Positions 12,836-41,848 of a stretch of 52,523 bases of DNA are shown piece by piece. The position numbers and the translations under genes were made by a program. The stretch comes from Octopus bimaculoides (taxonomy: Eukaryota): positions 16,297,738-16,350,260 of the forward strand of contig NC_068987.1 of NCBI RefSeq assembly GCF_001194135.2. Reading direction: 5' to 3'. Under the pieces are notes generated by a model. The model did no database searches. It was not told the origin of the DNA and saw only the letters and a program-made list of their open reading frames with translations. Numbering within the stretch: the first letter of the stretch is position 1; each line of letters starts with the position of its first letter.

Positions 12836-12934
12836 TCAGTATGCAACAGATCTCGGAGCAGGATAATATGACCGCCATTTGTCTTGCTGATATGCCGGTC
12901 GCAGTGGAAGCGTGGAGCTCTGAAAGGAGGGATT
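12836..12934 (-). CDS. Terminal coding exon (NPSFQSSTLPLRPAYQQDKWRSYYPAPRSVAY*)
   Basis: tctctctctctttcag|AATCCC...TACTGA; 33 codons including stop; AATAAA about 57 nt downstream. Confidence 0.8.
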   Translation of the reverse strand, partial: NPSFQSSTLPLRPAYQQDKWRSYYPAPRSVAY

Positions 12935-13562
12935 CTGAAAGAGAGAGAGAGAGAAAAAAGACAGGTTTCTTGATTATCCTGGATGATTTGGGTAAACATA
13001 GATTTTAAATTAATATAAATTAATTGATTAGGTACTTAATTACGTAATTAATGATGTTTACAACTAATAAAATGACTATTGAACACAATTAAATTATGAA
13101 CTGTGTGTGTATATATATATATATGAAATTTATATATTTACTTGGTAAGCCATAAGGTGGCGTCTGTTAGTATCATAAAACTTAGGTAAAGGTAGCGTTC
13201 CGGGCCTATAGTGATCTTCGAGAATCTGAAATACGACGAAAAACAGTTATATAAAGCAGTATATTAGTAGAATACATAGAGCAGTGGACAAATATTCTGC
13301 TCAATACCACAAATTTGCTTGTCAGTTGCTTGACTTTAAATCACTTGAGCATGGCTGACAATGGCTGACAATATGCGCATCTCTGACCACGAGCAAGAGT
13401 AATGGGGAAGCATCATAGCCATGTGTTGAGAGATTTTTTGGCGTTTGAATAAATGTAAGAAATGTATCTCGGGGTAAGAAAATAGGAAATAATAGTTACT
13501 ACTCGAGGACAAAACTCGAGTTGCCCAGTGCTATTGAATGAAATCACGTAAATTCAGTTTAC

Positions 13563-13676
13563 CAAATCTTCGGGGTATCTCACGGGATCGGATACAAAAC
13601 TCCATCGTCTGCGGTCNNNNNNNNNNTGGATTCGCTGGTTGATAACTGTCTGGCATTGGCAGTTTTGTTATTTCTT
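13563..13676 (-). CDS. Exon: cytoplasmic tail (KRNNKTANARQLSTSES..DRRRWSFVSDPVRYPEDL), phase 2 to 0, interrupted by a 10-N gap
   Basis: Very strong acceptor tttcctcttttcaatctcattgttttgtag|AAGAAAT and donor TTG|gtaaac; the frame after the gap is inferred from compatibility with the next exon. Confidence 0.75.
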
Positions 13677-13794
13677 CTACAAAACAATGAGATTGAAAAG
13701 AGGAAACGTAAATATCTTTTAGAATTGAAGATGTGGAATTGAAGATGTCAATTTTAGCATTCTTCCGATCTTTGTGCCCCGCCATGCATGTATA

Positions 13795-14092
13795 TTAAAA
13801 GGATCCCTTTCGGGTCATGAATGACCATGGGGTTGCACCTAGAAAGTTACCCTCCGAGGCACAAGTCGAAGCGAGGTTGTTTATGGAAGACCAGTAATTG
13901 CCTATGCCACGCCACCGATATTATCCAAGGGAAAGGCAAAGGCTGATACAGCTTGGCACCAGTGACACCACAACTAATTTCTACAGCTGAGTGAACTGGA
14001 GCAACGTGAAATAAAGTGTCTTGCTCAAGAACACAACACAGCCCAGTCCGGGATTCGAACTCATGATTATGAATCTGACGCTCTAACCAGAG
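13795..14092 (-). mobile_element. Family-C tRNA-derived SINE
   Basis: CTACAGCTGAGTGAACTGGAGCAACGTGAAATAAAGTGTCTTGCTCAAGAACACAAC; matches 43407-43672. Confidence 0.8.
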
Positions 14093-15139
14093 TCGTTAAA
14101 GCGGCGATATTCGTTCTGCCCTTCAGCGCTTTTGAGTTCAAATACTACGAAGCTCAACTTTACTTTTCGTCGTTTCTTGTCTCTTTCTGTGCATCTGCGA
14201 CTCTTTATGGAAAAAAAAAATCGGTTGTGATCAAACCTGGAAAAGGATAAGCTCCGCTAAGTTTTGAAATGCCCAGGACACGCCGTATGTTATAACGGAC
14301 ATCTAATAATTCCTGATGGATTTGTCCGACTTTTCCTTGCTTGCTAACCGCACAACTGTAAATAAAACTTCGTCACCAAGTGTAACTTTACAGTAACCAT
14401 TATGAAACATTATAAAATATTCTCCTTTCTCAAACTTCAGAAATTTCACACATTTAATTATTGCTGTGTGAGTTTTGTTGGTTCGAGTTCGAGATATGAA
14501 ATCGAGACTTCAATCTTTTTATATACAATTAAAAACATTTTCGTTGAATCGAAACATCGAGTGAATTACACCGTCTGACGTAAAACTCCACTTAGACATA
14601 TTATAATAAAGTTTTAAAATATCAGTTCGTTTATTTTGACAGTGAAAACATATTTTTCTCACGCTTTTATGATGTTGTTTTTCGTTTTTAAAACACAAAG
14701 CACTATGATATATTTCTTTTCAAAGCTTTCCGAATGTTATCACTCCAATTACATAGCACTCAAATTGAGTGTCATATGTAAATATTCTTTGTTGCAAAGT
14801 TAACCCCACTGTACAACGTTTCAACTTTAACTATAACTTTTTTGAATTCAAATTTAATCACTCATTTTCTGAGAGAGCAATTCGCTTTTGCTTTGATAAA
14901 TATTGACATATGTATAAATCTTTTTGACATTTGCTTCGCATTCTTGTTTTGCTTCTTTTCACCACGTTTATCCGCCAACTCAAACATATTGAAATTTAGA
15001 GTTAATGGAGTTGTTTATCTTCCAACCTTTTCAGAGAAGAACTGTTGTTTTCAACACGGTACAACCGCGACTTTTTCTCTTCCCTGCATTGTGTTTTCGA
15101 ATTACTGTTTCCTCTCATCAAAATTATTTCTTACCCAGT

Positions 15140-40429: not shown

Positions 40430-40600
40430 GCCGTGCCAACTCATCAGCGTTGAAGCAACTGCGTACAATCATCTTATTCCAGACTTAGATGCTGCATTAA
40501 CATCGTTGTTAAAAGCCAATATCGTAGGGAAGTTTACTTGCTGGAATAGTTGGAAAGTGGTCAGATATGGGGAGTTCAGAGTGGCAGGCCCAGTTGATCT
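40430..40600 (-). mobile_element. Degenerate Tc1/mariner remnant (SPDL region)
   Basis: AACTCCCCATATCTGACC (NSPYLT, about NSPDLT) preceded by a frameshifted WPA-like segment. Confidence 0.3.
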
Positions 40601-41159
40601 TGCTCAAAGATAGAGAACGAGATCTCAGTATTTCCGTCGATCGATATAGTGGGGATGNNNNNNNNNNNNNNNNNNNNNNNNNNNNNNNNNNNNNNNNNNN
40701 NNNNNNNNNNNNNNNNNNNNNNNNNNNNNNNNNNNNNNNNNNNNNNNNNNNNNNNNNNNNNNNNNNNNNNNNNNNNNNNNNNNNNNNNNNNNNNNNNNNN
40801 NNNNNNNNNNNNNNNNNNNNNNNNNNNNNNNNNNNNNNNNNNNNNNNNNNNNNNNNNNNNNNNNNNNNNNNNNNNNNNNNNNNNNNNNNNNNNNNNNNNN
40901 NNNNNNNNNNNNNNNNNNNNNNNNNNNNNNNNNNNNNNNNNNNNNNNNNNNNNNNNNNNNNNNNNNNNNNNNNNNNNNNNNNNNNNNNNNNNNNNNNNNN
41001 NNNNNNNNNNNNNNNNNNNNNNNNNNNNNNNNNNNNNNNNNNNNNNNNNNNNNNNNNNNNNNNNNNNNNNNNNNNNNNNNNNNNNNNNNNNNNNNNNNNN
41101 NNNNNNNNNNNNNNNNNNNNNNNNNNNNNNNNNNNNGTGGAACTTCAGAAGTAGTAAAT

Positions 41160-41325
41160 TATCCAAACGAGGGGTAGACCGCAAGCTACTCTTCAGGCCA
41201 AGGATACCGTGTTGCTAACCGTATCGTATTTTGATACGGGAAAAGTTCACATTCACTACCTTCTGCGCCAATAAACCACTATTGATCATGAAAGTTTTTA
41301 GATCTTCTACGGATTGCTTGAAGCT
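41160..41325 (+). mobile_element. Degenerate mariner transposase remnant
   Basis: KDTVLLTVSYFDTGKVHIHYLL..TID resembles the KVMxTVFWDxKGVI segment. Confidence 0.4.
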
Positions 41326-41787
41326 CATTCTTGATCCTTGGATTTTATCTTTACACACACACACACACACACGCACACACAAGTACACACACACGCACAC
41401 ACAAGTACACACATACTATATATGTTTACGCACACACACATACAAACAGAAATATATGAAATGAAATGACGCTGATTATGAATATCAACAATATAGCTGA
41501 AAGTAAAATATCCCAAGAAAACATTTTAGGTACTACATACATATACGAAGAATTCCCTTTAGAAGTGTTTAAAATCTGAAATCATCAAACAAGGGAGATA
41601 ACACTGGTAAGATCAGTTAAGTAAAGTTCTTGGTAATTAAGGACAAATTTCTGTTGTGGAAAAGTATTGGAATTTCTAAAAAGCATAAAAACTCAAACAA
41701 AAACCAAAAAAAGAAGAAAAACCAAAGAAAAGAAAAGTTAATCGGTTTAGATAAACAATGCAAAAAATGAAATTTAGTATGGATTAC

Positions 41788-41848
41788 CTGCAGACTTTTC
41801 GATTGTTTGATCTGTTGCACGTTCCATTATTCTTGCAACTGCAGCCAA
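41788..41848 (-). CDS. Exon: EGF-like module 1, N-terminal half (xGCSCKNNGTCNRSNNRKVCR), phase 1 to 2
   Basis: Minus strand tatattttag|TTGGCTGC...GTCTGCAG|gtaatc; 61 nt; open; C-x-C-x5-C-x8-C; joins in frame to 35517. Confidence 0.9.

What the first reader, a model, noticed from the sequence alone, without database searches (positions are those of the whole stretch)
12836..41848. Hidden 29-kb split gene for a tandem-EGF type I membrane protein, invisible in the ORF track
Seven exons of 47-114 nt have canonical GT-AG sites and a consistent phase chain (1-2, 2-1, 1-2, 2-1, 1-2, 2-0, 0-stop). They give EGF-EGF-TM-cytoplasmic tail, with NGT sequons in both EGFs, an NPSF motif, five tail tyrosines and a hydrophobic C-terminus (SVAY) that could bind PDZ domains. 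I do not recognise an orthologue, so it may be a lineage-specific receptor, adhesion protein or ligand precursor. The 5' end probably lies beyond the window or in gaps.
Basis: partly seen in the sequence, partly recalled or inferred. Interest (0 to 1): 0.72.

Follow-up and report, generated by a model that had tools for sequence, protein, structure and literature searches.

The report
Tail end of cephalopod mucin-13-like gene
The scattered mini-exons are real: they form the last eight exons of a cephalopod cell-surface glycoprotein gene, already predicted in the argonaut as "mucin-13-like", so this is an ordinary gene that Octopus annotations had split or truncated.

Summary
The split gene is real and lies on the minus strand. 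An exhaustive HMMER search with the last exon then found a full-length orthologue, GAB1608242.1 "mucin-13-like isoform X2" from Argonauta hians. Its exons 6-13 have the same order and phases as the window's exons. Lengths also match, apart from 6 extra nt in one exon and the gapped exon. dN/dS over 199 codons is 0.11.

Two corrections:
- There are eight exons, not seven. An 84-nt phase 0-0 exon at 13225..13142 was missed.
- The 114-nt exon (13676..13563) spans the 10-N gap. It is out of frame as written and lacks about 68 nt (about 23 codons).

All other gaps are intronic. The five 5' exons lie beyond the window.

The whole protein reads: signal peptide, Ser/Thr-rich stalk, small Cys module, SEA-like fold, EGF, two juxtamembrane EGFs, TM, and a conserved tail of about 124 aa with NPS[F/Y].

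Relatives turned up in other cephalopods (as mRNA contigs) and in ticks, so it is not lineage-specific. Octopus sinensis annotates the gene as two broken models separated by an assembly gap. This is a new member of a known kind, of low to moderate interest.

The parts
41788..41848 (-). Exon E1 (61 nt, phase 1-2). First half of juxtamembrane EGF-a: (V)GCSCKNNGTCNRSNNRKVC. NGT sequon at 41828..41820.
   Evidence: Acceptor tatatattttag|, donor |gtaatcc. Equals Argonauta exon 6, also 61 nt and phase 1-2.
35471..35517 (-). Exon E2 (47 nt, phase 2-1). Second half of EGF-a: (R)CPATFSGDKCEIKLH.
   Evidence: Acceptor ttcctacag|, donor |gtaagt. Equals Argonauta exon 7, also 47 nt and phase 2-1.
21503..21569 (-). 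Exon E3 (67 nt, phase 1-2). First half of EGF-b: VANRCSCQNNGTCQLNNGKVTC. NGT sequon at 21543..21535.
   Evidence: Acceptor gtgtttttcag|, donor |gtaaga. Equals Argonauta exon 8 (61 nt, phase 1-2). The O. sinensis orthologous exon at L003 70865-70930 differs at 4 of 67 nt, 3 of them synonymous.
18721..18767 (-). Exon E4 (47 nt, phase 2-1). Second half of EGF-b: (E)CPTWFLGEKCEVNGK.
   Evidence: Acceptor tttatttccag|, donor |gtaagg. 87% identical to Argonauta exon 9, also 47 nt.
15966..16065 (-). Exon E5 (100 nt, phase 1-2). Transmembrane helix plus basic stop-transfer: LLVIILCSTLGGLLFLTLLICILCIFVYRRKTK.
   Evidence: Acceptor ctgcattgcag|, donor |gtaagt. 85% identical to Argonauta exon 10, also 100 nt. 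The equivalent stretch of P0006 is modelled as one long helix, residues 417-452.
13563..13676 (-). Exon X (phase 2-0), first tail exon, interrupted by the 10-N gap at 13617-13626. Before the gap: (K)RNNKTANARQLSTSES. After the gap: DRRRWSFVSDPVRYPEDL. About 68 nt (~TLVKLPRLW...VSP) are missing.
   Evidence: Acceptor ttttgtag|AAGAAAT, donor GATTTG|gtaaac. Both halves match the single 172-nt Argonauta exon 11.
13142..13225 (-).
   Evidence: Acceptor tatttcag|ATTCTC, donor CCAAG|gtaaat. Equals Argonauta exon 12, also 84 nt and phase 0-0. 84% identical over the 25 aligned residues to Argonauta; 68-71% over all 28 to P0021 and P0006.
12836..12934 (-). Terminal coding exon E7 (99 nt, phase 0 to TGA at 12838..12836): NPSFQSSTLPLRPAYQQDKWRSYYPAPRSVAY*. 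NPSF at 12934..12923.
   Evidence: Acceptor ctctctttcag|. 97% identical to the C-terminus of P0003. Equals Argonauta exon 13, also 99 nt. Exon GC is 0.51 against 0.31 in the flanks.
12774..12779 (-). Candidate polyadenylation signal AATAAA, 57 nt downstream of the stop codon (inferred only).
   Evidence: Read directly from the sequence. No transcript evidence for this species.

Best explanation
Window 41848..12836 (minus strand) holds the last eight of about thirteen exons of a conserved cephalopod gene.

Its product is a type I membrane glycoprotein with this layout:
- signal peptide
- a Ser/Thr-rich, N-glycosylated stalk of about 130 aa
- a small Cys-rich EGF-like module
- a SEA-like beta-alpha-beta-beta-alpha-beta domain
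- an EGF_3/cEGF-like module
- two juxtamembrane six-cysteine EGF modules
- one TM helix
- a strongly conserved cytoplasmic tail of about 124 aa

NCBI names the Argonauta orthologue 'mucin-13-like'.

Shown here: exon structure, phases, orthology, purifying selection and domain layout.

Inferred by analogy with SEA/EGF transmembrane mucins (MUC13, MUC3/12/17) and with HEG1:
- The protein sits at a cell surface, probably epithelial, with a glycosylated stalk held away from the membrane by the SEA/EGF stack.
- The two juxtamembrane EGFs carry the C2-x4-T-C3 O-fucose consensus (CKNNGTC, CQNNGTC) and act as protein-interaction modules.
- The tail docks cytoplasmic adaptors through NPS[F/Y] (PTB or FERM-F3 type), a basophilic-kinase site (RRRWS) and an aromatic C-terminus. 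These would control sorting, endocytosis or signalling.

Each EGF is a phase 1-1 cassette split by a phase-2 intron between Cys4 and Cys5. Octopods carry two such cassettes, through tandem duplication of the two-exon unit. The two transcript-derived cephalopod orthologues carry one.
For: Orthologue: the exhaustive search with exon E7 found P0003 (97% over residues 589-620) and P0006. P0003 is GAB1608242.1, mucin-13-like, from Argonauta hians.

Colinearity: tblastn places P0003 residues 397-620 colinearly on the window's exons. The window peptide is 70% identical to P0003.

Gene structure: Argonauta exons 6-13 have the same order and phases as the window's. Lengths are identical except E3 (+6 nt) and the gapped exon X.

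Selection: dN/dS is 0.11, with pS 0.60 and pN 0.12, over 199 codons.

Transcript evidence in relatives: Logan contig L002 (1842 nt, run SRR25097173) carries the uninterrupted 566-aa ORF. A 566-aa member of the same 90% cluster (P0007) is on 60 contigs of up to 2.5 kb.

EGF: Pfam EGF_2 at 28.3 bits, above the cut-off. Notch EGF repeats are the best PDB sequence matches.

SEA-like domain: the AF2 model of P0006 has residues 204-322 as b-a-b-b-a-b at pLDDT 65-81. Foldseek hits SEA domains 2e7v, 1ivz, 7sa9 and 8gkl_E with TM 0.59-0.66 and probability 0.99-1.0. Pfam SEA matches 3 of the 9 family members, best E 1.7e-4.

Tail conservation: NPS[FY], DRRRWS[FY]VSDP[VI]RYPED and GTLPLP are shared across the cephalopod orthologues.

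Architecture of the analogues: PMC1552070 for MUC13 and HEG; PMC13643018 for MUC17, including MUC13 and MUC4 binding HER2 through EGF-like domains and tail-mediated sorting.
Against: - There is no RNA evidence from the window's own species.
- Exon X cannot be read through the gap, so an intact frame there is inferred from orthologues.
- The 'mucin' part is weak: only 26-33% Ser+Thr over about 130 aa, with no tandem repeats seen by eye (repeat finders not run).
- Pfam SEA is not detected in P0003 or P0006, the two cephalopod members scanned individually. The SEA call rests on a medium-confidence model (whole-chain mean pLDDT 46) and on weak Pfam SEA matches in 3 of the 9 aligned family members.
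- There is no GSVVV-type autoproteolysis motif.
- No vertebrate MUC13 or HEG1 was retrieved by the profile search, so orthology to vertebrate MUC13 is untested. The name is an automatic one.
- The tail has no detectable similarity to any PDB chain.
- Every functional statement is by analogy.
Confidence: 0.85

Rival explanations
1. It is a HEG1-like junctional receptor rather than a barrier mucin. The conserved tail would anchor a KRIT1/CCM-type FERM protein or another adaptor at cell-cell contacts, through NPSF and the aromatic C-terminus.
For: Human HEG1 has a PTS region, two EGF modules, a TM segment and a highly conserved 111-aa tail. That tail contains the same NPSF tetrapeptide and a C-terminal Tyr-Phe that is critical for KRIT1 binding (PMC3461514, PMC4733052). 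The PDB chain 3u7d_B reads FPGQYNPSFISDESRRRDYF, against ...AYQNPSFQSS...SVAY or SIPF here. MUC13 and HEG are neighbouring genes and were proposed to be related (PMC1552070). Here the tail is under stronger constraint than the EGFs (pN 0.09 against 0.19).
Against: HEG has no SEA domain, and this family has a SEA-like fold. The spacing differs: NPSF lies 28 residues from the end here and 11 in HEG1. The C-terminal dipeptide is AY or PF, not YF. There is no significant sequence similarity to the HEG1 peptide. A four-residue motif match is expected by chance fairly often.
Confidence: 0.12
2. It is a stand-alone, lineage-specific small tandem-EGF receptor or ligand with no orthologues.
For: The word-indexed search with the spliced peptide found only generic EGF proteins.
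Against: E1 starts in phase 1 with no ATG or signal peptide, and no plausible signal-peptide exon lies upstream in the window. A full-length orthologue of 620 aa exists, with five further 5' exons. Relatives occur in other cephalopods and in ticks.
Confidence: 0.02
3. It is a decayed or non-functional copy (pseudogene) whose exons merely look intact.
For: One coding exon is interrupted by an unread gap. There is no expression evidence for this species. The annotated Octopus models (P0022, P0023) stop before these exons.
Against: All eight exons are open, with canonical splice sites and conserved phases. dN/dS is 0.11 against Argonauta. The truncated O. sinensis model is explained by a 100-N assembly gap sitting exactly at the break in colinearity.
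Confidence: 0.03
4. It is a membrane-tethered precursor of a soluble EGF-family or Notch-pathway ligand, released by juxtamembrane cleavage.
For: The intron between Cys4 and Cys5 and the EGF placed directly before the TM recall EGFR-ligand genes (own knowledge). The best PDB matches are Notch and Delta EGF repeats. The O-fucose consensus is present in both EGFs.
Against: The C1-x-C2 spacing of one residue does not fit EGFR ligands (own knowledge). There is no DSL domain. Only 5 residues separate the last Cys from the TM, which leaves no obvious sheddase stalk. The large SEA/EGF ectodomain and long conserved tail fit a receptor or mucin-type protein better.
Confidence: 0.05

Closest known systems
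Argonauta hians 'mucin-13-like isoform X2' (GAB1608242.1), with the O. sinensis LOC118764059 fragment
   Same: It is the orthologue. The window peptide is 70% identical over the C-terminal 224 residues. The last eight exons have the same order and phases, and the same lengths apart from E3 and the gapped exon. The NPSF...SVAY terminus is the same.
   Different: The window's E3 is 6 nt longer. The window lacks the 5' five exons and about 68 nt of exon X. In O. sinensis the gene is annotated as two partial models, and E1/E2 fall in an assembly gap.
Vertebrate MUC13 (and MUC3/12/17): PTS-EGF-SEA-EGF(-EGF)-TM-tail transmembrane mucins
   Same: The module order is the same: Ser/Thr-rich region, EGF-like, SEA(-like), EGF, EGF, single TM, cytoplasmic tail with phosphorylatable residues (PMC1552070, PMC13643018).
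   Different: The Ser/Thr-rich region is short (~130 aa, 26-33% S+T), with no tandem repeats seen by eye. There is no G|SVVV cleavage motif. The tail is longer (about 124 aa, against 69 aa for human MUC13, from my own knowledge). No sequence-level link to vertebrate MUC13 was obtained here. Octopods have an extra EGF.
HEG1 (heart of glass)
   Same: Both have a PTS-like region, tandem EGF modules next to the membrane, a TM segment, and a conserved tail of ~110-125 aa with a Y(x)NPSFxS motif and an aromatic C-terminus (PMC3461514).
   Different: HEG1 has no SEA domain. Its NPSF lies 11 residues from the end and the protein ends in DYF. There is no significant similarity outside the motif.
Notch/Delta-type hEGF repeats
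   Same: They give the best PDB and Pfam sequence matches. Both have the NNGTC core with the C2-x4-T-C3 O-fucose consensus and the C5-xx-[FW]-x-G-x-K-C6 pattern.
   Different: The C1-x-C2 loop has a single residue. There is no Ca-binding D-x-D/N-E prefix, only two repeats, and none of the other Notch or DSL domains.

Membership tests
EGF-like domain (Pfam EGF_2 / hEGF) | Six cysteines in EGF spacing, with a score above the curated threshold | tested here: met
   EGF_2 scores 28.3 bits against a cut-off of 22.1, in two stretches. hEGF scores 27.6, just under its cut-off of 29.3. The pattern is C-x-C-x5-C-x8-C-x-C-x8-C in both modules.
Orthologue of Argonauta hians mucin-13-like (GAB1608242.1) | Colinear similarity over all exons, with the same exon order and intron phases | tested here: met
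   Identity is 70%. Argonauta exon lengths are 61/47/61/47/100/172/84/99 nt; the window's match apart from E3 (67 nt) and the gapped exon. dN/dS is 0.11.
SEA-type transmembrane mucin (MUC13-like architecture) | A SEA domain between EGF-like modules | tested here: met
   Tested on orthologues, because this part lies outside the window. The AF2 model has a b-a-b-b-a-b module at pLDDT 65-81. Foldseek matches SEA domains with TM 0.59-0.66 and probability 0.99-1.0, but E is only about 2e-3 to 5e-2. Pfam SEA matches 3 of 9 family members, best E 1.7e-4. It is not detected in P0003 or P0006, the two cephalopod members scanned individually.
SEA-type transmembrane mucin (MUC13-like architecture) | A PTS (mucin) domain: long, Pro/Thr/Ser-rich, usually tandemly repeated | tested here: inconclusive
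   The stalk of the orthologues is ~130 aa with 26-33% S+T (28-36% with Pro) and 4-6 N-x-S/T sequons. No tandem repeats were seen by eye; repeat finders were not run. Ticks reach 42% S+T+P.
SEA-type transmembrane mucin (MUC13-like architecture) | A G|SVVV-type autoproteolysis site in the SEA domain | tested here: not met
   The cephalopod beta2-beta3 turn reads ISWQLKTVEV or ILWKASYVEV. Ticks have FRPGLLV, which lacks the Ser nucleophile.
SEA-type transmembrane mucin (MUC13-like architecture) | Juxtamembrane EGF(s), a single TM and a cytoplasmic tail | tested here: met
   Shown for the window exons E1-E7. The TM of P0006 is modelled as a helix, residues 417-452.
Vertebrate MUC13 orthogroup | Detectable sequence homology or synteny (MUC13-HEG1 neighbourhood) | tested here: inconclusive
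   The profile search returned only cephalopod and tick proteins. The candidate set is word-limited, and no vertebrate MUC13 sequence was available for direct comparison. Synteny cannot be tested with these tools.
HEG1 | A conserved NPxY/F motif in the tail | tested here: met
   NPSF in the window and Argonauta, NPSY in P0006 and P0021. HEG1 has N1367-PSF (PMC3461514).
HEG1 | [quoted passage not shown] | tested here: not met
   The termini are ...SVAY and ...SIPF. HEG1 ends in ...RRRDYF.
HEG1 | No SEA domain; a PTS region plus two EGFs only | tested here: not met
   A SEA-like module is present in this family.
POFUT1-type O-fucosylated EGF | The consensus C2-x4-[S/T]-C3 | tested here: met
   CKNNGTC and CQNNGTC in the window. 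It is conserved as CQNNGTC or CKNNGSC in all relatives, including ticks. The modification itself cannot be tested here.
PDZ ligand | A class I (S/T-x-Phi-COOH) or class II (Phi-x-Phi-COOH) C-terminus | tested here: inconclusive
   V-A-Y and I-P-F fit class II loosely and do not fit class I. Tyr at position 0 is unusual (own knowledge).

The most novel reading that the evidence does not exclude
This cephalopod and tick family may be a protostome representative of the ancestral gene from which vertebrate MUC13 and its neighbour HEG1 both descend. Its conserved Y-x-NPS[F/Y]-x-S motif and aromatic C-terminus would then be an ancient docking site for PTB or FERM adaptors of the KRIT1 type. If so, SEA/EGF transmembrane 'mucins' and the HEG1-CCM junctional module would predate vertebrates.
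Probability: 0.15. Interest if true: 0.5.

Novelty: new member of a known kind. Interest (0 to 1): 0.25.

Why it matters
Practical value:
- It shows how to repair a gene that draft Octopus assemblies break. One model stops at ...APGEIC, and a second starts from an intron-derived ATG.
- It shows that a '10-N' gap hides about 23 codons of a conserved cytoplasmic tail.

Biological value:
- It documents a SEA-like/EGF type I membrane glycoprotein family in cephalopods, with relatives in ticks, whose tail is conserved.
- It gives a clean example of EGF cassette duplication: a phase 1-1 unit split by a phase-2 intron, present twice in octopods.

It does not reveal a new kind of system.

Tried and rejected
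- The word-indexed protein search with my first spliced peptide found only two generic EGF proteins. It missed orthologues that share long exact words, so its negative result was misleading.
Using the single exon E7 succeeded.
- My first choices for the sixth exon were wrong or incomplete: 13608..13563 with a 'gaccgcag' acceptor, or 13205..13142. The orthologue showed that both belong to longer exons.
- A search for further EGF exons or a signal-peptide first exon upstream of E1 found nothing credible.
- ORFs that looked to me like reverse-transcriptase or mariner fragments gave no Pfam hits, so I dropped that reading.
- An apparent absence of E1/E2 in O. sinensis turned out to coincide with a 100-N assembly gap, so I do not claim a loss.
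- The tail has no PDB sequence match, even at E<=10.
- Literature look-ups for a statement that SEA mucins are restricted to vertebrates failed, so that point rests on my own memory only.

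
Full report
**Setting.** The window is 36% GC, rich in microsatellites, and has 13 runs of N. The ORF list shows only repeat-derived or gap-spanning ORFs. NPSF and SVAY-stop occur once each, in the same minus-strand frame at 12934..12836, so the gene runs from high to low coordinates.

**Checking the observation.** I enumerated every AG...GT-bounded open segment on the minus strand by phase. This recovered the following exons:
- E1 41848..41788 (61 nt, phase 1-2)
- E2 35517..35471 (47 nt, phase 2-1)
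- E3 21569..21503 (67 nt, phase 1-2)
- E4 18767..18721 (47 nt, phase 2-1)
- E5 16065..15966 (100 nt, phase 1-2)
- E7 12934..12836 (99 nt, ending in TGA)

All have pyrimidine-rich ...AG acceptors, and GTAAG or GTAAT donors.

Spliced together they read GCSCKNNGTCNRSNNRKVCRCPATFSGDKCEIKLHVANRCSCQNNGTCQLNNGKVTCECPTWFLGEKCEVNGK, followed by LLVIILCSTLGGLLFLTLLICILCIFVYRRKTK. Pfam EGF_2 scores 28.3 bits, above its cut-off of 22.1. The closest solved sequences are Notch and Delta EGF repeats.

Two EGF-half patterns match these four exons and nothing else in six frames. The expected number is 0.015 and 0.09 per window in 200 first-order Markov simulations of the window's base composition. The patterns were written after I had seen the exons, so the Pfam score is the independent test. 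No exon overlaps an intra-window repeat. Exon GC exceeds flank GC for most exons, most clearly for E7 (0.51 against 0.31).

**Finding the orthologue.** The word-indexed search with the spliced peptide gave only generic EGF proteins. The exhaustive HMMER search accepts only contiguous window translations, so I submitted exon E7 alone (32 aa). It returned two relevant proteins:
- P0003, 620 aa, whose last 32 residues are 97% identical to E7.
- P0006, 566 aa, 72% identical.

P0003 is NCBI GAB1608242.1, 'mucin-13-like isoform X2, partial [Argonauta hians]'. P0006 heads a cluster of 19 Logan proteins. A 566-aa member of that cluster (P0007) is on 60 contigs of up to 2.5 kb. Contig L002 (run SRR25097173, 1842 nt) carries the 566-codon ORF without interruption, so it is an mRNA.

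**Mapping the orthologue onto the window.** tblastn places P0003 residues 397-620 colinearly on the window. It also settles the tail:
- DRRRWSFVSDPVRYPEDL starts at 13616, the first base after the 10-N gap.
- The stretch 13676..13627, behind the acceptor ttttgtag|, reads (K)RNNKTANARQLSTSES. This corresponds to Argonauta KAAKSAHSRHLSTSES.
- A further exon at 13225..13142 (acceptor tatttcag|, donor |gtaaat) encodes ILEDHYRPGTLPLPKFYDTNRRHLMAYQ.

**Comparing gene structures.** I derived the exact Argonauta gene structure from its locus L001. It has 13 exons. The last eight are 61 (1-2), 47 (2-1), 61 (1-2), 47 (2-1), 100 (1-2), 172 (2-0), 84 (0-0) and 99 nt (0-stop). The window has the same order and phases. 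The lengths are the same too, with two exceptions. E3 is 6 nt longer. Exon X shows 50 + 54 nt around the gap, so about 68 nt (23 codons, ~TLVKLPRLWTESGSQLYEVPVSP) are unread.

**The gap question.** With 10 N as written, the two sides of the gap in exon X are out of frame; a length of 2 mod 3 is needed. Every other gap lies in an intron, and the orthologue has no exon that would be hidden there.

The 84-nt phase 0-0 exon was missed, and the assembled tail was about 51 residues too short.

**Selection.** Codon-aligned against Argonauta over 199 codons, pS is 0.60, pN is 0.12 and dN/dS is 0.11. The tail (pN 0.09) and TM (pN 0.05) are more constrained than the EGFs (pN 0.19). That test comes out negative.

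**The rest of the gene.**
- Nothing of P0003 residues 1-396 maps to the window.
- O. sinensis LOC118764059 (P0022, 403 aa) and a metaclust protein (P0023, 340 aa) are 58-70% identical to the Argonauta N-terminal part. They stop or diverge right after ...APGEIC, the last residues before E1.
- In the O. sinensis locus L003, window 48883-52425 is colinear with L003 68302-65783 at 83-93% identity. The E3 orthologue sits at L003 70865-70930. A 100-N gap at 68304-68403 lies exactly at the break in colinearity.
- A second O. sinensis model of 209 aa starts at an ATG in the intron (MQIFPYYFIFLYILCLFFS|VANRCSC...) and reads into E3.

The O. sinensis annotation thus splits the gene in two, and the E1/E2 orthologues are not found in the sequenced part of the locus; they presumably fall in the assembly gap. 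The window's 5' exons should begin roughly 7-8 kb beyond position 52523.

**What the protein is.** Alignment of the cephalopod proteins with four tick proteins found by a profile search shows a common layout:
- signal peptide
- Ser/Thr-rich stalk (26-33% S+T in cephalopods, 42% S+T+P in ticks)
- small Cys module
- a module of about 120 aa
- an EGF with the motif NPC.D..SNYC...C.C.PGY.D.SPD
- a CQNNGTC EGF
- TM

An AF2 model of P0006 is poor overall (mean pLDDT 46). It does give residues 204-322 as b-a-b-b-a-b at pLDDT 65-81. Foldseek matches SEA domains: 2e7v, MUC16 1ivz, 7sa9 and 8gkl_E, with TM 0.59-0.66 and probability 0.99-1.0, but E only about 2e-3 to 5e-2. Pfam SEA matches 3 of the 9 members, best E 1.7e-4. 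It does not match P0003 or P0006, the two cephalopod members scanned individually. There is no GSVVV cleavage motif.

The order EGF-SEA-EGF-EGF-TM-tail is that of MUC13 and, with one EGF fewer, of MUC3/12/17 (PMC1552070, PMC13643018). This presumably explains NCBI's automatic name. Homology to vertebrate MUC13 was not shown here.

**The part encoded in the window.**
- Both EGFs are phase 1-1 cassettes, each split by a phase-2 intron between Cys4 and Cys5.
- E1/E2 pair with Argonauta exons 6/7 (shared FSGDKC.IK). E3/E4 pair with exons 8/9 (CPTWFLGEKCE). The duplication is therefore older than the split between Octopus and Argonauta.
- P0006 and P0021 have a single cassette.
That consensus is conserved as far as ticks.
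- The TM is followed by YRRKTKK.
- The tail has conserved blocks: RHLS.S.STLVKLPRLW, DRRRWS[FY]VSDP[VI]RYPED, GTLPLP[KR].YD.NRR.LM.Y and NPS[FY]QSSTLPLRP.Y.QDKWRS. It ends in an aromatic residue (SVAY or SIPF).
- The visible tail has 9 tyrosines.

**Comparison with HEG1.** Human HEG1 is the neighbour and proposed relative of MUC13 (PMC1552070). It has a PTS region, two EGFs, a TM and a conserved 111-aa tail. That tail contains the same NPSF and a C-terminal Tyr-Phe that binds KRIT1 (PMC3461514, PMC4733052). PDB chain 3u7d_B reads FPGQYNPSFISDESRRRDYF.

The local context matches: Y(x)NPSFxS. But the spacing to the end differs, the terminal dipeptide differs, HEG1 lacks SEA, and no sequence-level similarity is detectable. 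I treat this as a lead, not as membership.

**Mechanism.** Shown here: gene structure, orthology, constraint and domain layout. Inferred by analogy:
- The protein is a cell-surface glycoprotein, probably epithelial.
- Its glycosylated stalk is carried on a SEA/EGF stack.
- The juxtamembrane EGFs mediate protein contacts. MUC13 and MUC4 are known to bind HER2 through their EGF-like domains (PMC13643018).
- The tail recruits PTB/FERM-type or other adaptors for sorting or signalling.

**Verdict.** The interpretation as an orphan, lineage-specific protein is wrong. This is an ordinary gene of a known kind whose 3' part was mis-annotated or missing in draft Octopus assemblies.

Noticed in passing
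L003 (O. sinensis CM016865.1) 61512-61616, 68304-68403, 70808-70930: The O. sinensis annotation breaks this gene in two. LOC118764059 ends in an odd terminal exon (TNNNCQSKRGEKC...). A 100-N assembly gap sits where the E1/E2 orthologues should be. A second, 209-aa model starts from an intronic ATG (MQIFPYYFIFLYILCLFFS) that reads into the E3 orthologue.
   Followed up: yes
window 15141-15567, 21016-21333, 48531-48827, 50649-50992, 32093-32689, 6996-7147, 8873-9001, 28242-28385: A SINE-like dispersed repeat of about 300-400 bp has at least 8 copies in the window, at 73-90% identity. There are many more copies in the O. sinensis locus. One copy lies just downstream of E3 in both species.
   Followed up: partly
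window 13783-14089 and 43409-43675; L003 63727-64061: A second repeat family. Its translation contains CCVLEQDTLFHVAPVHSAVE.SC.VTGAKLY. Copies are 79-93% identical. It lies in the intron between E5 and exon X.
   Followed up: no
window 15960-15968 (E5 donor): Reading through the E5 donor gives AAG AAg taa, an immediate stop. Intron retention would therefore produce a form ending ...YRRKTKK with almost no cytoplasmic tail. The same holds at the Argonauta exon 10 donor (AAGAA|gtaagt).
   Followed up: no
P0006/P0021 against the window and L001: Two transcript-derived cephalopod orthologues have one juxtamembrane CxC-EGF, where octopods (window, Argonauta) have two. This fits tandem duplication of a two-exon, phase 1-1 cassette in the octopod lineage. 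The source species of run SRR25097173 was not identified.
   Followed up: partly
P0024-P0028 (Hyalomma, Haemaphysalis, Rhipicephalus, Dermacentor): Tick 'uncharacterized' proteins of about 600 aa share the layout and the motifs NPCED.DSNYC...PGY.DVSPD...PGELC...CQNNGTC...WY.GN.C followed by a TM. Their tails are unrelated to the cephalopod tail. Their SEA-like region keeps FRPG but lacks the Ser nucleophile.
   Followed up: partly
window 37059-37583 (+), inside the E1-E2 intron: A 174-aa ORF with a long Asp/Asn/Gly-rich acidic run. Pfam gives only weak low-complexity-type hits (Nop14, E 3e-4, below cut-off). It is probably not a gene.
   Followed up: partly
(tool behaviour): The word-indexed protein search with the spliced peptide missed P0003 and P0006, although they share long exact words with it (for example LVIILCSTLG). 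A negative result from that tool alone would have wrongly supported 'no orthologue'.
   Followed up: yes
window 22500-22900 (-) and 42939-43133 (-): Short ORFs that looked to me like a non-LTR reverse-transcriptase tail (...LDYCSQLWSP...) and a mariner transposase C-terminus. Pfam gave no match, so this stays an unconfirmed impression.
   Followed up: partly
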